From Phallusia mammillata (Eukaryota), in the NCBI GenBank assembly GCA_965637545.1, contig OZ281501.1, positions 1,116,001 through 1,180,000 of the forward strand: a stretch of 64,000 bases of DNA. Reading direction: 5' to 3'. The number at the start of each line of letters is the position of its first letter. Within the stretch, counting starts at the first letter, position 1. The notes beneath the pieces were generated by a model. That model ran no database searches, was not told the DNA's origin, and worked only from the letters and a program-made list of their open reading frames with translations. This document shows positions 1,876-48,278 of the stretch, piece by piece. The position numbers and the translations under genes are program-made.

Positions 1876-3081
1876 TACTTATCATGTTATTCGTTGTTAA
1901 CCAAACAATTTCTATTGTTTCTATAATCCGACCAATCAGAGACGACTAACTTTCGGTAAAATACCTCCTCTCATTGGATGCAGAGTTTTTCCCGCCTTAT
2001 TCTTTGAGGTTTGTTCTTTTCTTTGTTAAGCCTTCGTCTTGTTTTCTGTATCGGATTCAGGTAAGCAAAAAACTCTTTATAGTTGTTTTTTGACTATTAG
2101 TTACTGGAAAGCAAAGCAAAATTTCTTTTTGCAAATTAGTAAGAAGCGGACGTGTCACAAATTGTGGGATTTTTGTAGTAAAAAAGTGATTGAAAAAAAG
2201 CAATGTTTGAGTCTGTCTGTGATAGCAAACAAGCTCTTCAAGTGCATGTAGGACCACTGTGAGCAACTTTATGGGTCCAATTATTGTGGTTTGCCGGATT
2301 TTAGTTTATGTGCTGCGTACATTTTTTGTGTGACATTATTTCCTGCCATTTGTGTTTTAATGTGCAGATCAGTTTTACAACAAGCTTTCTGATTTTTTTT
2401 GTGTACGAACATGTTACTCAACTGGCTCACCAAAATTTCAATTTGAAATGCAAAGAAAAAGGATTTGGCAAAAAATGTACAAAACATTTTTGAAACAACT
2501 TATACTTGGAATTTTTATGAAGCAAATGTTAAGAACTGAACAAAAGGTATTGGTGCTTTCATTTGTTTTGTCTGCAAAAACAAACACTTTAAACATAATG
2601 AAAAGAAAACAGGCGCCTTAATCCATTTGGCTTGTTTAAGTTTCTGGGTTTTAAGAAAAACGACAATTAACTTTAGACTTAACACCTTGTACATTTGTTT
2701 CAGGTTCAATTGAGGAATTTAATTGTGTTTGCTGGAAACTTGTACACTGCCAATTAACTTAAAATGAAAACAAGAAAATCATTGTGGATTTTTCTATTTT
2801 ATCAATCCAATCTTTATTTCAGTCTTGGTAACTAAGGATTCAACTTATGTGTCTCTTTATGGTAAACGACTAGAAACGTAAGTTTTATTTGAAAAACATA
2901 TCATTTTTAATATATTTATATATATAGGCTAAATTTTGTTTGCTAAAATTTAATATGCTGTACAAACATGATTACTGACCAGAATTTGTATAATAACAAG
3001 CTTCAGGTAAATCACATAGCAAAACTGGCAAATGTTATTTTGCCAATTGTTGTGCAAACTGTTTAAACTGGCAACACAGTA

Positions 3082-5719
<2,638 letters not shown>

Positions 5720-6137
5720 TTTTATTTACTCTGATACCAAAGTTTCTGCGATTTATAATGACAGCAAATGATGGTAGCTCAGGTTTGGGCTAATTTATCT
5801 TTATTCATTTTCTCTGAATCATCTGGTTTGTCGCAAGCTGTTTAACCAGTCGTAAGTGCTTGTTAGTTATCAAAAGAATGTTAAGCTGATATATTGGGCA
5901 GTTTTCGGGAATCCAAAAAGCTTACGACCCCAAGCAAAATTTGAACTTGGCGTGGTTGCCGTCAAAACACAAATGAATATTGGGGAAATCCCTGTTTGAA
6001 ACCTGCCAGAAAATCGTCGAAGCGTGTATTATTTCTTCACGAAGTACAGTTAATTAGTTGGATATCTTAGTAATTTTATTAGAACACATGGTTCTGTATA
6101 TTTAAAAAATCATTACTATATTTTATTTCTTAGAAAG

Positions 6138-7737
6138 TTATAAGAATTGGTTTCGTGAAATCAATTTGTAAGCCGTGAAGGCAGTTCCAAGCAGCAGTAA
6201 GCTCCCATACAGAATTGCTTCTCGTTTGAAACCAACAAACATTGGATGCTGAGAAAATAGGTCATCCAGAATATTGCCCTTCACGTTTTTGTGTGGAAAC
6301 GGTATTGATGGAATTTCTTTGCCGAGAAACTTGCACAATGGCTCCCAACCGTCTTTTACTGAGAAGAACAACGTTTGGTCTTTGGGCGCTTTCTTCAAAA
6401 AAAGGCTCCGTTAAAATGTCATTCGTATCATTAAACACACAAGAGATACGAACATTAATAAAAATCTGGTGTTTTATTCCCTAAACTAGCTGATACTTTC
6501 AATGTCAAAACATTAAGCTCTAAACATTGGATTTACTTTGTTGCATGCAAAAACATTTTACCTGCTTGAGATACGTGTAATGTCTTCTATATGTCATTTT
6601 CAAAAGGGTCTCGTTGAGAAAAGGCTTTCCATACGGTTTAGCCATTCTTGTGTTGCATCGCAACGTAGTTCCAACTGAACAGATAAGGTTACTTTGCTCA
6701 GTTTAGAAAGGAAACAATTTAGCGACAAGACTTCACCCAACTTCTACTCGAATAGCTGCACAAGCTGGTTATGAACGTAAAAAGTTAGTTGCAAACATTC
6801 TCTTCAAACGCACTACAGTAACACTCTCGTTACAAGGTGATATTGAGGCGGGACTGGGTAAACACTTTGAACGAAATCCAGTCACTGTGTTGTTTGTTTT
6901 CTGGCTGCAATGTCCTTGTCCCGAACTTACATGTTGATTTGTACTTACTCAGTGGTGGGATTCAAATTTTTGTCAGCTGGTTCTATCACAAAAGTCCTAT
7001 TTTTCAGCTGGTTTTGTTACAGAAAGTCAATTGACAGTAACCAGTAATGCTAACCGGTTCGCTGATCTCATAAAATTTCGTGAGAAGGTTCTATGGAACT
7101 GGTGCAAACCGGCTGAATCCCACCACAGTACTCACTTATTCTTTTCTCGTACGCCCCTAATCGTCGCAAACCAGGTGAAAGTATCCAGATAAGTCTGATC
7201 CACCACGAGTTCCAGGCGACCCCTTGTTGTTCGATGCTTTTCCACCAAGCGTCTAAATCGTCCCGGGTGGTTACGATGATCTACAGGAAAATAAATCTCA
7301 AAACACTTCGATCAAAAAGTGAATTTTGTTATTACACGAATCATACAGTAGGTTACTCTGTGGCAACAAATAACAAATTTCCCTTTAGATGAACTATGTG
7401 GCAACAAATACAGGTGTTGTCTGGCCTATGTGTTACAATAGACATGGTAGTACTCAGTTTTTGTAGATAACAATTGACAGCTTACCTTAGCATCGGGAAA
7501 GGCTTCAAGCAGTTCTTCCCAGAAATAATAGGTCGGGATATCAGTTACAGCATCAACGTTTTCATACATGGGCTGCAAATCAGCAGGACTGCCACCGTAC
7601 GTACATATCTTTTCCCATTCAGCACCCAAATACTGGTAGTGGTCTGGATAATCGTACACATTATAACCCAGCACTTGTAAAGCCTCTGCCATTGACTTTG
7701 TGCCGGTTTTCGGCATTCCAGCTATTATAACCTTCAT
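6138..7737 (-). CDS. Sulfotransferase-family protein (Sulfotransfer_4-like P-loop fold) with C-terminal hydrophobic anchor
   Basis: Exons 7737-7486, 7280-7136, 6674-6562, ~6392-6138. Motifs MKVIIAGMPKTGTKSMAEAL (PAPS P-loop), DAVTDIP, FPDAKIIVTTRD, FSVKDGWEPLCKFLGKEIPSIPFPHKN. The frame stays open upstream to 7950, so the start is uncertain. Confidence 0.88.
6950..7128. mobile_element. hAT MITE (CAGTGGTGGGATTCA family), copy 1
   Basis: TIR CAGTGGTGGGATTCA / TGAATCCCACCACAG. 8-bp TSD TACTTACT/TACTCACT. Near-identical copies at 18116 and 19843. Confidence 0.9.
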
Positions 7738-8340
7738 GTTTGCAACAAGTCTGTGATGTTGGTGCTTTGACTGGTGGCCTTTCTGTGGGTAATGATTTAC
7801 TAAGCAATAATCAATTGCTTGCAAAACCGGTTTGTAGGGTATAGCGCTGCGATCCTGCACTGCCATGCAGTGGTGACATGGTGATTTAAAAAGAACTTGT
7901 TTTTTCATAGTTTGGTTAACACATTTTTCAGTGTTGTTATTATCTCCCACCGTGGCTAAACAAAATGCTGTGTTGAAAATTAATTCAGCGTATAGAATTC
8001 GCCTGTTAAATTTCGTTTCAATATTGTTTTAATTATTGGCATAACCAAGGAAATTAGAGCATGTGTTCCACATTCAGTACAGATTAATATCCTGTGCTGT
8101 GCATTGTAATTATCAGACATTGTGTTGCTCGCCCTGTTTATGTAAATTCATGCAGGCAGCGTTACAAACAACCAGTCACATTGCTAATTGGGCAGTTAAG
8201 GGATATCCTGATATTAAGGAAAGTCTTGGAATTTGAGAGTGGACGAGCATTTTAAGTTGTAGCAAACTCAGAAAAGATCGTTTTTGTACAGGTTAACGCT
8301 ACTAAAAGATCTAACTGGCGATTAGAAGAACCATCGAGCA

Positions 8341-11300
8341 ATGTTTGCAACACTGAAGTTGCTGTCGTTTCTGTTTTTAAACCATCTTGCTTTAGGTAAG
8401 TTGAACCACAGTGTCAAATAAACAAGGTTTCTAAGTTTGAACATGTTTTTGCTCAGCTAATAGAAGGTTTACAGTAAAAAGACATCGATTGCTAAAGGCC
8501 CTGTCAGAACTGAACAAAAGTTTATCGTAGTATCAAACATAATCTTGTAATATCATGTTGGACGTATGCTATACCTAAACATTTAGTCATGTTTCTAAAA
8601 AATAATTGCAATATCATCCATTGCCTTAACATTACTATGTATAGACATTGTTGCTAAGCGGAGTTTGTTTAAGACGTGCTTCGGTATTTTTGCTTTCTTA
8701 GGTTACCTTTTGCATTCTGATTACTTCCTTGAGAACGACTTGTCGCAGTGGGTCATAGAGATTGTGGAAAACCCTCACAACAATGAGAAGCAATATTACA
8801 CGAATCGGTCTGTCAATCTAAATGTAACAGATGGAAAATTGGTCATTACACCGCACAAAGAAACGTATGTTACTGTTTGTGAAAAACCTACTTTGTTTCC
8901 AGCAGTTGCGTACAGTAATGTTGACTAACATTCTTCAGTTTAATAAAAAGCAACTTAGTCCTAAAATGACTAACGCTTAAATCTTGTTCTAAAAGATTTG
9001 ATTTGCCCTGCGTTTTTCAAGCTTGGCCCCATACCCCCCCTTCAGAGATAGACAGGTTGTTTGTGAGGGGTATAACACCTAAGTAAACCAACAGGCACAA
9101 GGCAAAATTTACTTGCAAACTTCACAATAACCACATTAGGCATTGCATATCGTGTTATGTGAGCAATTTTTTTTGTGACCCACCTGTTTTGTCCTTTGTG
9201 GTCCACAGAATTTAGCATTTACATTGGTTAGCGGGCGTCACTGACGTTCCGGAAATAAAATATAAAGTGTCAATTATTGTTTTACTGTGAAAAGATTTGA
9301 CTATTTAACTTGTGTGTGTTGGTGTAAAAGTTTGACTTCGCTTGTCCCTCAATTTAAACTGCTTGACCAGATCTTAGTGTATTTTTCTCTTTAACTATAT
9401 CGACCACGATTTTCCAGGTTTGGATCGAAGCAATACACATCCGGCAGATTGTACAGCAAATTCAGCTGGTTGTATGGAAGAGTCCAAGTTCGTGCAAAGC
9501 TCCCTGAAGGATATGGACTGTGGCCTGCAATATGGATGCTTCCCACGTGAGAACACAATTATATTGAAGCAGAGTTGTAAGCGGGAACAAAATGAGGACA
9601 CGAACTGATAAGAAAAATCCCGAATTTTTTTTTTAAAGCAAAGCCTGAAATTTAAGTAAAACTGCGGCATGAATCAGGCTGCGTATTTAGTCAGACCAGT
9701 TTGTGCAAACTTAAGGCGGTAGAAATAAAATTTGTTTGTTTGTTTGTTGGATTATACACTATTTACGGCAAATTCTACGCTGAATAATATAGCATGTCGT
9801 TTGTAAAATGCCTCGTGGGCAATTCTAATCACACCAGGATTAGAATCTAATGCAGTGGCTCTGAAACAGTGGTATGTACCCCCATTAGAATAAATTGTCA
9901 TTTTACAAGGGTGCTTATTTTATCATTGTTTAGCTCCGTGACATAAGTGATGACAGTTTAGTTTTTTTTTGAAAAGGGTTGAACAAAATACATCTACTGG
10001 TTCTCAGGGGTAACAATAATAGAAAGGTAAAGAACCATTGAACCAATGTAAGCTTCAATTTAAAGAAATATATATCTAATCACCTTTAACCATTTTCAGT
10101 GATGAAATTTTCGGTGGTTGGCCGCAAAGTGGTGAGATTGACATCGTTGAGGCGAGAGGTCAAGAAATTCAACAAGTACAATCTGCAATTCATTTTGGTG
10201 GTCCATGTTGTTCTGATACGGCAAGCGAGTCATCTGGCCCACTGGAGACTCAATGCAGCATCAACGAATTCCACGTGTACGAACTTGATTGGACGCCATC
10301 TGAATTGGTGAATATTTTAAGGGTTCATATATCTTGACATAATTATTCTTTCGGCTCTCTCCATCTGTACTAAACATAGTAGAAATCCGAATTAGGTGAA
10401 ATTCCAGCCGTGTGTGAAATTAGGTTTAAATCAAGCCCTTACCTGGTCTGAAAAGCCCCCTTTAAGTTGGTAAACACTTTAGCTTTGATACAATTTGTTT
10501 CTCATCGAAATCATTTGCGCCCGGCTTCCGTCGTTAAGAACGATTTCTGTACGAGGTTATGTTTTAAAGTTTGTGTTTTAACTTGTGCGTTTTTTAGGTT
10601 TTCCGTTTCGACGGCATTGCATTCCACAGAAGCAGCTTGGATAGGATTCTTAAAAATGTTTATGCTGAAGAAGGTAAATAAAAGCATAAAGTGCCTACGG
10701 ATAAAATTTTATGGGGGTAATGATATAACCCAGTGGTTCTTAAACTTTTTTTGTTGCGACGCCCCTGGAAAAGTTTTCTGGACTTGCGACGCACCAGCAA
10801 ATAAAAGTTAATGAGGAAACTTATTATTAAAGTTATGTTTATTGATACAACAACAAAAAGCCACGAAACGCAACTATTCTGCGACGCCCTTGGAAAACTA
10901 AAACGACGCACAGTTTGAGAACTACTGATATAAGCTATAAAATATTCCTTTGATTTTGTTGCTTTCACCCCCGCTAGTTATTTCCCCCAATTGTTACAAT
11001 ATTTAATACGCTAAACTCTTACTAGGACTATATAGCGGTTTTGTCTTCAAAAAATCGTTCTTACTATCTTTAGGTGTAAGTGGGCCTAAACCTGTTTTTT
11101 AACACAAACCTCGAATTATGCCCCATTGTTTGTGAAATTGCGGTACTAATAAGAATGTATGTGAAGTCAGGCCCTAATTTAAAGCCCGTTTTATTTAAAC
11201 TTTAACCCGTATTGTTCTACCATACTAATTTGCACAGACAACGTGTAACTGAATCATAAACAAACTCTTGGAGAACTTATACGCGTTGGATGCAACCGTC

Positions 11301-13715
11301 TCCACAATCAAATCGTATTGTTTCTAATCACTACATGTACGGTACCAGGGCAACCGTTTGACCAGCGTTTCCACCTCGTATTAAATGTAGCGGTAGGAGG
11401 ACATTTCCTTTCCGGTCCTGATCCCGATACAGTTTGGGAATATCCCCAAGCACAGATGGAAGTCGATTATGTAAAAGTTTACCCACTGACAGTGAGTTGA
11501 TGATATAACATCAGATAACTAAAACTGGTTCATTATAACGTGGACCGTGTGGTTCAATAAACAAAACTAAAAGTGCTTCATATAAGCCAGCATATTAACC
11601 TCGATAAAATGCCTTTACCTCATTCAACAACCAATTGGCACTAAAATTTGTTGTCACAACGTTTCAAACGTTATTTAGGCGAGAAATTTATTAGTGTAGG
11701 TTCTTTGTTGCGGTCCTATCTCATTTTTCTATTGTGCTTCACATTTTTTACTTTGGCATTTTTCACGTGGCATATTTGCAGCTGCGTTTGTGGTTTTAAT
11801 GCCAGTCCGAATGCAACGTTTCTCCATTAGGATTATCTCTTCGTGTACCAAAGCCAAACACACAACGGCAGTATTTTACAGGACATAGCCACAACTTCAT
11901 GTCGTGCTAAAACCGGGATTACCAAATCCGAACTGTGCACCGGAATTTCCATCGCCTGTCACTATCCATGCCAGGCAAACCTCTACGATTTGTGTGGAGG
12001 TTTATTCGATTGCTGCCATGATCCGACTTCATGCGACGATTCACTTTATGGTAAAAGAAACCTGACCATTGCAGCAGTGTTTTTAACATGCTTTTCGAAA
12101 ATGGACCTCTAAACTATAAAAAAATTAGGTCAAAATAGGCTACTCGTAAATGAGAATGTGTAAAAAGCGTGTAAATATGCTGGAACTAAAATGCTTAAAC
12201 GGCGAACACATTTTACTGCAGGCCCATGCAGCTTTATTTGGCTTTATTCAACAATTGTACTTTCTTTTTAAACTTGAATCCCCCAGCTCGTTGCTTGGTG
12301 GATAAAGTAACTTTAAAACAACATCAGTACCTTATTTTATTACAAACTTTGAATAAGTTACTGACGATGCTATAAAGGCTATATATATATATGTATTAAA
12401 ATCTGAATTATTCTTTCTCTAGAACTTTGCTTAATTCGGTATAATACCCCTTGAAAGCAAGCCTGCTTTACTGCGATTACGTGAAACTCATAATTTATAC
12501 AGACGATGCCAGTGCCCTGTACAAGGAATATCACAAACAAGTTGGTGGAAGCAATTCCTGTGACTTTGAAGGCACCGCTGAATATTACGACGTTCAACTC
12601 AACGATGAAGGTCCAGAAAAACCGCAATGTTTAGTGACGGAGTCTGCAGACAACAGTGGACTTTGTGGCTCCATAAGCTGGGCTTGTGGTGGCCAAACTT
12701 TTTCCAATGTAAGTCTTGCTTAATGAAACCAGCATCACCGTAACCCATTGCACACCAACTGGTATGCAATGTCAAAATTAGTTGCCCCCTGTTTTGGCCT
12801 ATACAACCATGTCTTGTCACCTGCCAGCTGCACTGATAAAACAGAGTCGAAAGAGCCCGAATCCGAAAGTACAAGCCCGAATCCCGAACCCTGGCCCGAA
12901 CCTAAATCGTTTTTGAGAAGTCCGTTTAAACCCGAAAGTGTGATTGACAGGCCTACATGTAAAAAAGACATACACAATAGACAATGGCCTAAGCAACACG
13001 TTTTAGAGCTGTTGGCGATTAGGTTATATCGCAGCAACAAGCTACTTAGCTGAGTAATTCATGTTAGACAAAATTACGGACACATAACCTAGGGAGGTCT
13101 GAATCAAGTTTGTAAAACTGAAGCCCGAATCCGACACGAAAACCCTGGCCCAAATTGCAACTCTGGTTTTCACTGTCGACAACATGATTGTTTTTCTTGT
13201 TTGTTCAGTATTTGGAAAAAAAGACTCAGATTGGTGACCGCTGCCCAATCTGACATCACTTTTTAACGCGTCCCACCCAGAATTGTAAGTTAAGTTTCTC
13301 CAAATATCGGCCTAAATTGGGCCTGAATTTACACTATCTTTTAAGACAAAATTAACTAGCCAGTAGCCATTGCTGGACCTGACCTAATGCCCAACTTTGT
13401 CTTCCGGAGTTTCCTTGTATAGGCCTGTAAATCAGACTTTCGGACCTAAACGGGCTGCTCAGGTCGTTTGCAACTCTGGTTTCACCTTTATTACAGGTGA
13501 CACTTTCATGCGATGCTGGAGCTGACATGTTATCGTGTTGTTCGGGCGACCCACAAACTTGTCCTGATGCAAGACTGAGGGAAGCGTCTCAACAAATATT
13601 CCAGGAATATTACGACAACAATCCCAGATCTACGTCATGTGATTTCGGTGGAAAAGCATACTTGGTCAATCCTATCGTTCCACTCGATTGTGACAGCACA
13701 TATGGACGTATTTGA
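8341..13715 (+). CDS. Secreted GH16 beta-1,3-glucanase/glucan-binding protein with two C-terminal X8 (CBM43)-like modules, ~472 aa
   Basis: Exons 8341-8395, 8702-8864, 9418-9546, 10100-10307, 10598-10673, 11349-11491, 11831-12050, 12503-12708, 13497-13715 sum to 1419 nt in frame. Signal peptide MFATLKLLSFLFLNHLALG. GH16 motifs NNEKQYYT, YTSGRL, YGRVQVRAKLP, LWPAIWMLP, WPQSGEIDIVE, FHVYELDWTP, PFDQRFHLVLNVAVGG, MEVDYVKVY. Two Cys-rich modules end SCDFEGTA and SCDFGGKA. Confidence 0.9.
10731..10927. mobile_element. hAT MITE (CAGTGGTTCT family)
   Basis: CAGTGGTTCTTAAAC ... TTTGAGAACTACTG. TSD ATATAACC/ATATAAGC. Confidence 0.8.
12845..13485. repeat. Fragments of an interspersed element with CCCGAA subterminal repeats and a TGCAACTCTGGT end; more copies at ~16395-16450, ~17375-17440 and ~45040-45148
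   Basis: Recurring (A)GCCCGAA(T/C)CCG motifs and the terminus ACCAGAGTTGCA / TGCAACTCTGGT. Confidence 0.65.
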
Positions 13716-14552
13716 GTCACCAACAAAATACAAAAATACAATATCCAGTGATCTTAAAAATGTGTATTCAATTTTTTTTATCTGTTTGTGGTGTTTGTTT
13801 AAATGTAATTGAAAAAAAATGGACGCGCTGGTTCAAAGTAAGCTGATCGAAGAAACGTTTACGAAAGCTTCATCAAACCAGTTTACTAAAAAGAGCTTTT
13901 TGCAGTCGCTCAATCATTACCATCAGTAGCAAACGAAGTCTCTAAACGGATTCTTTGTGAAAGAAACAACATTTCTATTCTAATTTTTCAGTGTTTTTTT
14001 CTCTTAAGATGTTTTTAACTGCTTGGTAAGCATATAGAAGCATGGCGTGTTTACGTTGGTTCGTAAGCTTTTTAGTTGGTGACTTTGGAGTAGTTGACCA
14101 CTTCTTGACCCCTTCTTTGTTTTCCGAAAAGTGATCATTATTCCCAAATCCAATGATTGGGCATCCTGGCACAAGTGGCACCCCTTAGGAACAGACCTGT
14201 ACCCCCTTAAAGGCGCTGGCACCCCTGGCTAAGAACCCCTGCAACTAGGGTACATGAAATATCTGGTAATAGCGAACTCGCTTGTAAAAAACCTTGAATA
14301 TCTGATCGGTCCATTGGGGCAGAGTATAAAAACGAGAAAACGTGATTTCCACAAGTACCTGGAACATCTTACTAGTCTCTACTGCCTCTAGTTATGCCGA
14401 TGTATTTGCTTTAAAATAACGCTAACACAGCTTGTCCAATAAATATGCGTAACACATCCAAAATGAACCAACTGAAGCCAATGATGTGTCAAAATTCTTG
14501 TAGGTTATTTGGTGGGCATGTAAGAAATAAAAAGACCTCTTAATTGTAACTT

Positions 14553-45379: not shown

Positions 45380-48278
45380 CTACATTTCTTCAATTAGTCG
45401 TCTCGTCGGTTTACGTTTTCTTTTGGAACGACACGGAACATTAAAGTTGCGAACAATTTCACAATCATCAGAAACATGATGCGGCGATAAAGGTAACGTT
45501 TGCAACAGAGAAGACCTTTGAGATAAGGATTCAATGTTGCGGCGAATATGTATACGATTACGACGATAAAGTACATTGTCAGGAGTACGAACGATATAGG
45601 AGCGCGGTGACAAAACCTTGTCAATAACTCCGTCCTCTGTCCATGTGCGGCGAAGAAAATCAAACAGTTTTACAGGGGTACCAGGCTTTAAAACACTTAA
45701 TGGTTTTGAACCTACATCAAAATAACGTTTTTGTACTGTTTTTTCGGCATAAAAAGGGCGTTTGGGCAAATTATGACACCTAAGCTTTTCTTCACAAATA
45801 GGCAAATTACTTTTGGTTTGCCTTCCCATGAGCAACTGTGACGGCGATAAACCACACTGTAAAGGCGAACTACGATAAATTAACAAATTCAAAGTCCTGG
45901 CCACTGGCAACAGATTTTTTTAACAGATTTTTAACGGTTTGTACCGTCCTTTCCGCAAGTCCATTAGATTGCGGAAAATGGGGACTTGATGTTAAATGAC
46001 AGAAGTCCCAAGATTGCGAAAAACATCTAAATTCACGAGAGGAAAATTGTGGCCCGTTGTCGCTAAATACTTTAAGCGGCACACCAAAGCGAGAAAACGT
46101 TTGCTTAAGACAGGTAATAACTGCATCGCTAGAAGTGTTGTTAATACAATAAACATCGGGTATAATAATCAACAACTACTAAATACGACCGACCATTATA
46201 CGAACATAAATCAACACCTATTTTTTCAAAGGGAAACTTGGGAATTTCATGTGGATTCAAGGGTTCTTTTTGCAAACGCGGTCTGTAACGCATACATGTT
46301 GAACATGCGGACACCAAATTTGATATGTCCTTGTTAATTCCAGGCCAATACACTAATTCGTGGGCACGACCTTTGCATTTAACTTCCCCCATATGACCTT
46401 CATGCAGCTTAGCTAGAATTGACCGTCTCATTTTCCGGGGAATGACTATTTTGCTTCCTTTAAACAGGACACCATCATTTACGGACAGTTCATCACGGAC
46501 TTTCCAAAATACCCGGGAGTCTGGTGTGCAATTTGCGGAACGTTCCGGCCAACCATTGTAAACGTAATGCACGATGTCTATTGACTGGGGATCTCGTTCA
46601 GTTTCTTCACGAAGTTGCGCCATAGCATTGGAGGAGATTGGAAGTGATGACACAACCAAATGAACATAACGTTCCACATCAGCGTGTGATTGCAAATCTT
46701 CGGTTTCTAGGGAAACACTTCTCGACAAAGCATCGGCTGTGTGCATGAACTTTCCTGGAGTATAGATTACATTAAAGTCATACGAATGCAGACGTATCAT
46801 CAGACGTTGTACCCTTATTGGACAATTGTTTAAGTTTTTTTTAAACAACGGAACTAATGGTTTGTGATCAGTTTCTATGCATATGTGTTGACCATATATG
46901 AACTGATGAAACCGCTCACACGCAAATGTTACCGCAAGGAGTTCCTTTTCAATTTGTGCGTAGCGCGTTTCAGCATCAATCATTGCTCTAGAGGCGTAGA
47001 ACACAGGATACCACTCTTTGTCATGCATCTGAAGCAATACCGCACCAAGAGCTTCTTTTGAGGCGTCTGCGGATACCTTTATTGGAAGTACAGGATTAAA
47101 ATGTTTAAGAATGGGTTGGCTAGAAATTACCCTCTTTAATTCTATCCACGCTTTTTCTTCGTTACTGGTCCAGTTCCATTCACTATCTTTATGCACCAGT
47201 GAGCGAAGTTGCGCAGTTTTTTCTGACACATCGGGAATATACCGTGCAAGATAGTTCACCATGCCCAGAAAGCGTTGAACATCACGCTTGTTTGCTGGTC
47301 GAGACATCGTCTCAATGGCTCGAACCTTCTTTGGATCTGGTTGCAAACCACCTGCACTTAAAACATCTCCCATGAACGTTAAACGATTGACACAAAAAAC
47401 GCATTTTTCACGATTCAATCGTAAATTTGACTTCCTAGCTTGTTTCAAAACCATGTGGAGTCGCCTGTCATGTTCTTCTTTGGTACTGCCCCACACAATA
47501 ATATCGTCCATTGACGTGTCAACACCGTCCATGTGCTCAAACAAGGAATGTACAGCACGATGAAATACTTCTGGGGCGGACGAGATACCAAACGGTAAAC
47601 GCAAAAACCTGTACCTTCCGAAGGGAGTATTAAATGTACACAGCTTCGAACTTTCTTCGTCAATTTTTATTTGCCAAAAACCACTCACAGCATCCAACTT
47701 GCTAAAAAACCTTGCATTACTAAATTGTGACATTAATTCCTCCCGAGTAGGTAACATGTAATGTTCACGCATGATTGATTTATTGAGGTCACGGGGATCA
47801 AAACAAACACGAAGTTTTCCGTTCTTTTTGTTCACAATTACTAAGGAGTTTACCCATCTGGTTGGTTCAGTCACTTCTGTTATAACACCTAATCCTTTCA
47901 TTCTCTGAAGTTCTTCTTTCAACTTTGGTTTCAGCAGATACGGAACTTTTCGACTCGGATGGATGACTGGAGTGGCATTGGAGTTCAACCTTATTGAGTA
48001 TGTATCTGGAAGACAACCGAGACCATTAAAAATATCCTCGTATTCGCGGACAAGATTACCACACTGCTGTATAGACTCCACTGCATGTACACGATTGAAA
48101 AGCATTAACGCCTCTGCACCAAAAAGACCGATAAGTGGTTGAGTTTTAGCTTGGACAACAAAGAACTTCATCACGTGCGCATGGTTTCGGAATGTGACAT
48201 TTAAAGTGCAAACACCATACACAAATATCTTGTGATTGGCAAACGCAGTTAGCACAATATTGGTACTTTCGATACGAG
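45380..48278 (-). mobile_element. 5'-truncated Ty3/Gypsy (Mag/K02A2.6-like) retrotransposon pol: protease end, RT, RNase H, integrase, with frameshifts
   Basis: Motifs LDAVSGFWQI, PFGISSAPE, SMDDIIV (RT), ADASKEALGAVL, EKELLAV, TDHKPL, HEGHMG...CSTC, SDNGPQF, SNGLAERTV. Frame breaks near 46150 and 45890. No gag or 5' LTR. Confidence 0.92.

What the first reader, a model, noticed from the sequence alone, without database searches (positions are those of the whole stretch)
8341..13715. Animal gene fusing an active-looking GH16 beta-glucanase to two plant/fungal-type X8 (CBM43) modules
Seen: signal peptide, intact EIDIVE catalytic motif, and two ~85-aa Cys-rich repeats (C..K/T.....LC..I..AC...C......CC....C.......Y..Y......SCDFxGxA). 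Eight spliceosomal introns, including inside both repeats, argue against bacterial contamination. Established: X8/CBM43 binds beta-1,3-glucan and is typical of plant GH17/callose-binding proteins and fungal GH72. Animal GH16 glucan-recognition proteins normally lack X8. Inference: horizontally acquired or shuffled architecture, used for digesting algal laminarin, antifungal defence or tunic remodelling.
Basis: partly seen in the sequence, partly recalled or inferred. Interest (0 to 1): 0.75.

Follow-up and report, generated by a model that had tools for sequence, protein, structure and literature searches.

The report
Sea-squirt glucanase with two CBM43 modules
This is a real, expressed sea-squirt gene for a secreted enzyme that cuts beta-1,3-glucan (algal laminarin, fungal walls); it carries two glucan-gripping modules otherwise known from plants, fungi and protists, and while the enzyme part was published in 2026 as a likely horizontally acquired tunicate gene, the two gripping modules are not mentioned in that paper or in any tunicate paper found in the library searched.

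Summary
Window 8341-13715 (+) holds an intact 455-aa ORF in 9 coding exons. All 8 GT-AG introns are joined exactly in transcript contigs from three studies. One correction: exon 7 starts at 11882, not 11831. A non-coding 5' exon also ends at 2877.

The protein has a signal-peptide-like N-terminus and a GH16 laminarinase domain with an intact EIDIVE motif. Two Cys-rich repeats follow.

The repeats are divergent X8/CBM43 modules:
- They stay below Pfam's X8 cut-off.
- An ascidian-repeat profile hits only CBM43 entries in the PDB.
- Profile-profile comparison with bona fide X8 gives 98% probability.
- AlphaFold models of both repeats rank the three solved CBM43 structures 1-3 of 48,161 chains.

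The gene is the ortholog of Ciona KY21.Chr9.350. That gene is a GH16_3 endo-beta-1,3-glucanase published in 2026 as a tunicate HGT candidate, expressed only in stomach. The paper does not mention X8. The architecture and all intron positions are shared with Styela and Clavelina, so it is old and vertically inherited within ascidians.

GH16-X8 fusions also exist in uncultured protists. Their GH16 domains are the sister group of the tunicate clade.

Most likely function: a digestive laminarinase targeted by CBM43. This is moderately interesting: a new variant of a known kind.

The parts
2848..2877 (+). 3' end of a non-coding 5' exon; it holds a short uORF and a GTAAGT donor follows at 2878
   Evidence: The loose 30 letters of the X6 transcript contig lying before 8292 match here exactly and nowhere else in the window. 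Seen in one contig only.
8292..8395 (+). Exon with the 5' UTR and the start codon (ATG 8341); encodes the signal-peptide-like N-terminus (aa 1-18)
   Evidence: X6 contig piece 8292-8391 is joined to 8698. ORF reading. The signal peptide is inferred from the sequence only.
8702..11491 (+). GH16 catalytic domain in five exons: 8702-8864, 9418-9546, 10100-10307, 10598-10673, 11349-11491 (aa about 20-258)
   Evidence: Pfam PF00722 on exon pieces: 29.2 and 30.2 bits against a cut-off of 22. 61% identity to the Ciona GH16 domain. Splice joints confirmed in RNA contigs.
10134..10151 (+). Catalytic motif E-I-D-I-V-E (aa 128-133; the ExDxxE signature of GH16 laminarinases)
   Evidence: Both Glu and the Asp are invariant in all ascidian orthologs.
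10731..10927 (.). High-copy MITE-like element inside intron 5, with imperfect terminal inverted repeats (CAGTGGTTCTTAAACT ... CAGTTTGAGAACTACTG); not part of the gene product
   Evidence: Depth of about 1e6 in DNA run X11 against about 290 beside it, with loose ends at 10731/10746 and 10927. Repeats read.
11882..12597 (+). X8/CBM43-like repeat 1 (aa 259-346; first Cys codon at 11900; CDFEGTA at 12559-12579), split by intron 7 (12051-12502)
   Evidence: RNA joints 11491/11882 and 12050/12503. Local non-tunicate X8 HMM: aa 281-342, 7.7 bits. Pfam X8 on the exon-8 piece: 18.6 bits, E 0.003. Model of the orthologous repeat: pLDDT 91.4, with CBM43 structures at ranks 1-3.
12616..13712 (+). X8/CBM43-like repeat 2 plus C-terminal tail (aa 353-455; first Cys codon at 12628; CDFGGKA at 13638-13658), split by intron 8 (12709-13496); stop codon at 13713-13715
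   Evidence: phmmer with the exon-9 piece against 1.8 billion proteins hits plant X8 proteins at E 3e-4 and 8e-4. Local X8 HMM: aa 362-441, 14.3 bits. Model of the orthologous repeat: pLDDT 86.6, with CBM43 structures at ranks 1-3.

Best explanation
The locus is the ascidian ortholog of Ciona KY21.Chr9.350. It encodes a secreted, catalytically intact endo-beta-1,3-glucanase (laminarinase) of GH16 subfamily 3, followed by two tandem, divergent X8/CBM43 carbohydrate-binding modules. The proposed working is as follows. The protein is secreted, most likely into the stomach lumen. The two CBM43 modules bind beta-1,3-glucan chains, such as laminarin or chrysolaminarin of filtered algae and diatoms, or yeast and fungal wall glucan, and hold the enzyme on its substrate. 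The GH16 cleft then cuts internal beta-1,3 links by the retaining double-displacement mechanism, with Glu128 as nucleophile, Asp130 as helper and Glu133 as acid/base. Shown here: gene structure, transcription and splicing, GH16 membership, the intact motif, homology and fold of both repeats to CBM43, and conservation of architecture and introns across ascidians. Taken from the literature: the GH16_3 assignment, the HGT-candidate status and stomach-only expression of the Ciona ortholog. Inferred: secretion, glucan binding by the repeats, and a digestive role in this species.
For: Gene model and splicing. GH16: Pfam hits on exon pieces. The closest solved structures are bacterial laminarinases, with 3ILN at E 1e-41, then 4CRQ, 4BOW, 2HYK and 3AZX. 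The ExDxxE motif is invariant across orthologs. X8/CBM43: phmmer with exon 9 against 1.8e9 proteins gives only 9 hits. They include the Styela ortholog, the Pfam-verified plant X8 proteins P0007 and P0009, and the Pfam-verified unidentified GH16-X8-X8 protein P0008. The ascidian-repeat profile against the PDB hits only 2JON (Ole e 9 CBM43, E 0.005) and 8PE1/8PE2 (Gel4 GH72-CBM43). hhalign against X8 gives 98% probability and E 1.4e-13. A local HMM built from 61 non-tunicate X8 domains hits both repeats of the window protein and of every ortholog over nearly its whole length. AlphaFold models were built without any plant or fungal X8 in the alignment and reached pLDDT 86.6 and 91.4. For both, 8PE1 (Z 6.7 and 7.2), 2JON (5.3 and 5.3) and 2W61 Gas2 (5.2 and 5.2) are ranks 1-3 of 48,161 chains, aligned to their CBM43 regions. 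Foldseek's top three are the same family. Orthology: 43-50% identity over the full length to Styela, Clavelina and Ciona proteins of the same architecture. All 8 intron positions and phases are shared with Styela, and 7 of 7 with Clavelina. The published RT-PCR primers for KY21.Chr9.350 translate to RVYPLEDI and GTAQRL, both found in Ciona protein P0015. Function: the paper reports GH16_3 by dbCAN, stomach-only expression and a proposed role in digesting plankton glucans.
Against: Pfam's own X8 model stays below its curated cut-off: 18.6 bits on a window piece and 10-12 bits on the Styela repeats, against 25.7. The fold Z-scores of 5-7 are middling in absolute terms. The repeats carry more cysteines than the canonical X8 domains aligned here, with 8-10 against about 5-6, so binding specificity could have shifted. 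No binding or activity data exist for any tunicate member. The tissue of expression in this species is unknown, because the RNA runs are coded and were laid as contigs only. The full spliced window protein could not be given to Pfam or dbCAN, because a spliced sequence has no reference.
Confidence: 0.77

Rival explanations
1. The protein is an immune or antifungal factor. On this reading it is a secreted pattern-recognition or effector protein that binds fungal beta-1,3-glucan through the X8 modules and lyses or opsonises fungi, rather than a digestive enzyme.
For: CBM43 and GH16 both act on fungal wall glucan. Animal GH16 relatives (GNBP/beta-GRP) are immune receptors, which is established knowledge. 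The 2026 paper also mentions protection from pathogens as a possibility.
Against: The catalytic residues are intact, unlike most recognition-only GNBPs. The GH16 is GH16_3, not the animal GH16_4/GNBP lineage: no named animal GH16_4 appears in the top 120 relatives. There is no CBM39 N-terminal domain. The Ciona ortholog is expressed only in stomach, not in blood cells.
Confidence: 0.12
2. The Cys-rich repeats have the CBM43 fold but have been re-purposed. They would bind something other than beta-1,3-glucan, for example tunic cellulose, mucus glycans or another protein, or serve only as stabilising disulfide-rich domains.
For: The repeats are strongly diverged from canonical X8 and sit below the Pfam threshold. 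They have extra cysteines, including a CC pair invariant in all copies. Repeat 1 keeps only one Tyr of the YY pair that is conserved in X8 and in repeat 2.
Against: The catalytic partner is a beta-1,3-glucanase, and CBM43 is always found on beta-1,3-glucan-active enzymes: GH17, GH72, GH5_33 and GH16. The most conserved X8 stretch (A..F..YY......CDFGG.A) is kept in repeat 2.
Confidence: 0.1
3. The feature is an artefact: a microbial contaminant in the assembly, or a dead pseudogene.
For: The closest named relatives of the GH16 domain outside tunicates are bacterial, at about 43% identity.
Against: Eight spliceosomal introns are removed in RNA from three studies. Intron positions are shared with two other ascidian genomes, where the gene is flanked by ordinary animal genes. 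The ORF is intact. An animal MITE and an LTR retrotransposon lie in the same window.
Confidence: 0.01

Closest known systems
Ciona KY21.Chr9.350 / LOC100181198 and its tunicate orthologs (GH16_3 endo-beta-1,3-glucanase; HGT candidate; Genome Biol Evol 2026, PMC13390645)
   Same: It has the same architecture of GH16 plus two Cys-rich repeats. Identity is 49% over the full length and 61% in the GH16 domain. The ExDxxE motif is kept. Styela and Clavelina orthologs share the intron positions.
   Different: It comes from a different ascidian species. The window copy has an extra Cys in repeat 1 and lacks the Cys of the ortholog GGxCYL motif in repeat 2. The paper does not mention the C-terminal X8/CBM43 modules: both terms occur 0 times in it.
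Bacterial GH16_3 laminarinases (for example Rhodothermus marinus 3ILN, Zobellia LamA/LamC 4BOW/4CRQ, Thermotoga 3AZX)
   Same: The catalytic domain is alignable end to end (E 1e-41 to 1e-32, about 43% identity) and carries the same ExDxxE motif.
   Different: Bacterial enzymes carry no CBM at all or CBM4, CBM6 or other bacterial modules, never X8. They also have no introns and no eukaryotic signal peptide.
CBM43 / X8 modules of plant GH17 (Ole e 9, 2JON), plant PDCB-type proteins and fungal GH72 (Gas2 2W61, Gel4 8PE1)
   Same: The fold is the same: two short strands framing a helical core. The framework shared with X8 comprises C..K at the start, the WAC/YAC motif, the helix A..F..YY, and the terminal CDFxGxA.
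   Different: They are attached to GH16 instead of GH17 or GH72. They have extra cysteines (8-10 per repeat, with an invariant CC) and an inserted segment between the second and third helices. They fall below the Pfam PF07983 cut-off.
GH16-X8 fusion proteins of uncultured eukaryotes (metatranscriptome mRNAs P0050, P0088, P0112, P0134, P0147 and others); their X8-bearing relatives include a GH72 of the amoebozoan Planoprotostelium fungivorum
   Same: They combine a GH16_3-type catalytic domain with one to three X8 modules. Their GH16 domains, together with a mite protein, form the sister group of the tunicate clade (98/88 support; the constrained tree is better by 19 lnL, p-AU 0.76).
   Different: Their X8 modules pass Pfam and form a separate clade from the tunicate repeats. 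They have long Pro/Thr linkers and an additional C-terminal Cys-rich module. Their source organisms are not identified.
Animal GNBP / beta-GRP and invertebrate GH16_4 laminarinases
   Same: They share the GH16 fold and a link to beta-1,3-glucan.
   Different: They belong to a different subfamily. None appears among the 120 closest relatives. They use an N-terminal CBM39 rather than a C-terminal CBM43, and many have lost the catalytic Glu residues (PMC6827312).

Membership tests
Glycoside hydrolase family 16 (Pfam PF00722) | Significant match to the family profile | tested here: met
   Exon pieces score 29.2 and 30.2 bits against a cut-off of 22. The orthologs P0003 and P0023 score 76 and 88 bits.
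Glycoside hydrolase family 16 (Pfam PF00722) | Catalytic ExDx(x)E motif with both Glu residues present | tested here: met
   EIDIVE at aa 128-133 (10134-10151). It is invariant as E-I-D-I-x-E in all ascidian orthologs.
GH16 subfamily 3 (laminarinases) | Closest relatives and closest solved structures are GH16_3 laminarinases; dbCAN subfamily call | tested here: inconclusive
   The closest PDB entries are bacterial laminarinases and the closest database relatives are bacterial GH16. The dbCAN GH16_3 call exists only for the Ciona orthologs in PMC13390645. dbCAN was not available here for the window protein.
X8 / CBM43 (Pfam PF07983) | Score above Pfam's curated gathering cut-off (25.7 bits) | tested here: not met
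   The window exon-8 piece scores 18.6 bits (E 0.003) from only 17 residues. The Styela repeats score 10-12 bits but align over profile positions 2-76. The complete spliced window repeats could not be submitted. This is an operational threshold, not a structural feature.
X8 / CBM43 (Pfam PF07983) | Homology to bona fide X8 domains by profile methods | tested here: met
   hhalign gives 98% and E 1.4e-13. The profile against the PDB hits only CBM43 entries. The non-tunicate X8 HMM hits both repeats in all orthologs. phmmer hits plant X8 at E 3e-4 in 1.8e9 proteins.
X8 / CBM43 (Pfam PF07983) | CBM43 fold | tested here: met
   Models of both repeats (pLDDT 86.6 and 91.4) place 8PE1, 2JON and 2W61 at ranks 1-3 of 48,161 chains, with Z 5.2-7.2 and 72-79 residues aligned. 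The models are of the Clavelina ortholog, not the window protein.
X8 / CBM43 (Pfam PF07983) | Binding of beta-1,3-glucan | not testable with these tools
   This needs recombinant protein. The papers naming the ligand-contact residues of Ole e 9 and Gas2 were not held.
GNBP / beta-GRP (animal GH16_4 recognition proteins) | N-terminal CBM39, GH16_4-type domain, and often lost catalytic residues | tested here: not met
   There is no N-terminal domain before the GH16 domain. The catalytic residues are intact. The nearest relatives are GH16_3 from bacteria, protists and a mite, not animal GH16_4.

The most novel reading that the evidence does not exclude
The tunicate ancestor acquired this gene not from a bacterium but from a eukaryotic microbe that already carried a GH16_3-X8 fusion, with the X8 then duplicated. 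That would make it a eukaryote-to-animal transfer of a complete, targeted enzyme. It would name the kind of donor that the 2026 paper left 'unclear'. It would also put CBM43 into animals, where no paper found in the library searched reports it. The X8 modules are the marker: they were seen here only in eukaryotic proteins, and GH16_3-X8 proteins of uncultured protists are the sister group of the tunicate GH16 clade.
Probability: 0.3. Interest if true: 0.65.

Novelty: new variant of a known kind. Interest (0 to 1): 0.45.

Why it matters
Tunicates are the textbook case of horizontal gene transfer shaping an animal body plan, through cellulose synthase. A second imported carbohydrate enzyme family was reported in 2026, with its donor unknown. 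Recognising that this family carries two CBM43/X8 modules adds a testable clue to its origin. It also gives a mechanistic handle, namely substrate targeting to laminarin or fungal glucan in the gut of a filter feeder. Finally, in the literature held here, it would extend the known range of CBM43 to animals and to GH16 partners.

Tried and rejected
1. The first gene model used the 11831 acceptor and gave 472 aa. It was rejected because RNA contigs and orthologs use 11882.

2. Pfam on exon pieces gave only a sub-threshold X8 hit. Pfam on the whole Styela repeats was also sub-threshold. Pfam alone would therefore have missed the domains.

3. Foldseek against the PDB gave no hit with E below 0.001, although the top three were CBM43. 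The exhaustive VIA-align search was needed.

5. No paralog of the gene exists in the window (tblastn).

6. X8 domain tree (77 columns, weakly resolved). The tunicate repeats group with the two X8 modules of P0008, an unidentified eukaryote with a different GH16 type. They do not group with the X8 modules of the protist GH16_3-X8 proteins. Co-inheritance of GH16 and X8 is therefore not supported by the X8 side.

7. The ligand-contact residues of CBM43 could not be checked, because the Ole e 9 and Gas2 structure papers are not held.

8. The source organisms of P0008, P0112 and P0023 could not be named. They are short metatranscriptome or transcriptome contigs with sample numbers only.

9. The complete spliced window protein was never sent to Pfam, the PDB search or structure prediction. 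Exon pieces, orthologs with ids and local HMMER runs were used instead.

10. The contamination and pseudogene readings were rejected.


Full report
**1. What is in the sequence**

Reading 8000-14200 and assembling the open frames gives a nine-exon coding region on the + strand. The exons are 8341-8395, 8702-8864, 9418-9546, 10100-10307, 10598-10673, 11349-11491, 11882-12050, 12503-12708 and 13497-13715. Every intron is GT-AG, and the ORF is uninterrupted.

That adds 17 residues which no ortholog has.

Assembled transcript contigs from three separate studies of the same coded organism (runs X1, X5, X6) were laid on 8200-13950. They join the exons at exactly these eight places and use 11882. The genomic run X11 shows none of the joints. 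The product is therefore 455 aa.

One contig also carries 30 further letters upstream of 8292. These match 2848-2877 uniquely, and a GTAAGT donor follows directly after them. The gene therefore has a non-coding 5' exon and a first intron of about 5.4 kb. That intron contains sulfotransferase-like and LanC-like ORFs on the other strand.

**2. Catalytic half**

- Pfam GH16 (PF00722) hits exon pieces 3 and 4 above the curated cut-off.
- The motif E-I-D-I-V-E lies at aa 128-133 (10134-10151). Its acidic residues are invariant in all orthologs.
- The closest solved structures are bacterial laminarinases: 3ILN at 1e-41, then Zobellia, Nocardiopsis and Thermotoga enzymes.
- The N-terminus looks like a signal peptide, with a Lys, a hydrophobic run and A-L-G. 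This is read by eye only.

**3. The two repeats**

Residues 265-346 and 357-455 each hold nine Cys and end in CDFxGxA.

Pfam's X8 model gives 18.6 bits (E 0.003; cut-off 25.7) on the exon-8 piece, from 17 residues only. On the complete Styela repeats it gives 10-12 bits, though aligned over profile positions 2-76. By Pfam alone the domains would go unrecognised.

Four further tests agree that the repeats are X8/CBM43:

- (a) phmmer with the exon-9 piece against 1.84 billion representatives found nine proteins at E up to 0.001. They include the Styela ortholog, three short exon-like fragments and two plant proteins with Pfam-verified X8 (one of them GH17-X8-X8). They also include P0008, an unidentified eukaryotic GH16 with two Pfam-verified X8 domains.
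- (b) A profile of the ascidian repeats searched against all PDB sequences at E up to 10 hit three sequences only. These were Ole e 9 C-terminal domain 2JON (E 0.005) and the Gel4 GH72-CBM43 entries 8PE1 and 8PE2.
- (c) hhalign of that profile against six bona fide X8 domains gave 98% probability and E 1.4e-13. A local HMM of 61 non-tunicate X8 domains hits both repeats of the window protein (aa 281-342 and 362-441) and of every ortholog.
- (d) AlphaFold2 models of repeat 2 and repeat 1 of the Clavelina ortholog were built from tunicate-type sequences only. They reached pLDDT 86.6 and 91.4. An exhaustive structural comparison with 48,161 PDB representatives put 8PE1 (Z 6.7 and 7.2), 2JON (5.3 and 5.3) and 2W61 Gas2 (5.2 and 5.2) at ranks 1-3 for both models. 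In each case the alignment was to the CBM43 region.

The Z values are modest. Even so, the three solved CBM43 representatives took the first three places twice, in agreement with the sequence tests. I conclude that the repeats are divergent CBM43/X8 modules, with extra disulfides and an inserted segment.

**4. Relatives and history**

The word-index search with the repeat region of the Styela protein found the same architecture in Styela clava, Clavelina lepadiformis, Ciona intestinalis and an unnamed transcriptome. The GH16 search added Ciona savignyi and several marine metatranscriptome proteins. The window protein is 43-50% identical to these over its full length. It is not any of these species.

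I mapped the Styela and Clavelina proteins onto their chromosomes. All eight intron positions and phases are shared with Styela, and seven of seven with Clavelina. The two-repeat gene with its introns therefore predates the split of these ascidian lineages.

The two introns inside the repeats lie at non-equivalent positions within the repeat unit. This suggests the duplication came before the introns.

**5. Literature**

A 2026 paper (PMC13390645) lists Ciona KY21.Chr9.350 and two paralogs as GH16_3 endo-beta-1,3-glucanases. It reports them as absent from other deuterostomes and present in five tunicates and some arthropods. It gives the donor as 'unclear', reports expression only in stomach, and proposes digestion of plankton glucans.

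Its RT-PCR primers translate to RVYPLEDI and GTAQRL, which bracket repeat 1 of the Ciona protein P0015. The window gene is therefore the ortholog of a published gene family.

The paper contains no occurrence of 'X8 domain' or 'CBM43'. The library holds no paper on tunicate biology that mentions CBM43. The two papers containing both 'CBM43' and 'tunicate' concern a marine fungus and seagrass cell walls.

**6. Origin**

Among the 120 closest GH16 relatives, none is a named animal GH16_4. Most are bacterial, at about 43% identity. Three are eukaryotic-looking mRNAs with a Pfam-verified X8.

Relatives of their C-terminal parts are metatranscriptome proteins in which X8 is joined to GH16, GH72 or PF11790 modules. 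One GH16 among them carries three X8 domains. The only named relative is a GH72 of the amoebozoan Planoprotostelium fungivorum.

In a careful ML tree of the GH16 domain, the tunicate-type clade (100/99) is sister (98/88) to a clade made of these GH16-X8 proteins, a mite protein and a further GH16 (P0031). The 38 sampled GH16 proteins from genomes and metagenomes, bacterial where named, lie apart. With more rows, the tree that holds this grouping together is better than the free quick search by 19 log-likelihood units (p-AU 0.76).

A weakly resolved X8 tree points the other way. It groups the tunicate repeats with the X8 modules of P0008 and not with those of the protist GH16_3-X8 proteins. A eukaryotic donor carrying a ready-made cassette is therefore possible but not shown.

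**7. Verdict**

The enzyme family and its probable horizontal origin are already published. What is new here is the identification of the two CBM43/X8 modules and the link to protist GH16-X8 fusions. The most likely function is a secreted digestive laminarinase targeted to its substrate by CBM43. An antifungal role cannot be excluded.

**8. Limits**

- The complete spliced window protein could not be submitted to Pfam, the PDB search or structure prediction, because no reference exists for it.
- The source organisms of the protist sequences are unknown.
- No biochemical data exist.

Noticed in passing
window 10731-10927 (intron 5 of the gene): A MITE-like element of about 200 bp with imperfect terminal inverted repeats. 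It is present at enormous copy number in the genome: contig depth is about 1e6 against about 290 beside it. It also occurs in RNA-run contigs.
   Followed up: partly
window 2848-2877 and 2878-8291: The glucanase gene has a non-coding 5' exon 5.4 kb upstream. That exon holds a short uORF (ATG...TAG). The long first intron contains ORFs on the minus strand with a sulfotransferase domain (7426-7950, PF17784, 84.6 bits) and a weak LanC-like match (5375-5719). This looks like a nested or overlapping gene arrangement. It is seen in one transcript contig only.
   Followed up: partly
window 45380-48255 (minus strand): A 704-aa ORF carries reverse transcriptase, RNase H and integrase zinc-binding domains, as in an LTR retrotransposon pol. 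A further ORF lies just downstream.
   Followed up: partly
window protein aa 288 (repeat 1) and aa 440 (repeat 2): Compared with its orthologs, the window protein has gained a Cys in repeat 1 (HYPC). It has lost the Cys of the GGxCYL motif in repeat 2, while keeping that residue's presumed partner near the C-terminus. This would fit a rewired or inter-repeat disulfide.
   Followed up: no
P0020, P0021, P0022 (ENA contigs of 3-5 kb): These are tunicate-type GH16 genes that appear intronless and in tandem. They have poly-Thr linkers and a more diverged Cys-rich module that ends differently from CDFGG. They may come from a compact-genome tunicate or another marine eukaryote. The organism is not identified.
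   Followed up: no
L008 4307-8192 (ENA ERZ21736675, 988-kb contig): This is the 3' half of a further homologous gene with the same exon layout (equivalents of exons 6-9). Identity to the window protein is 34-79% per exon. It indicates another ascidian-like genome carrying the family.
   Followed up: partly
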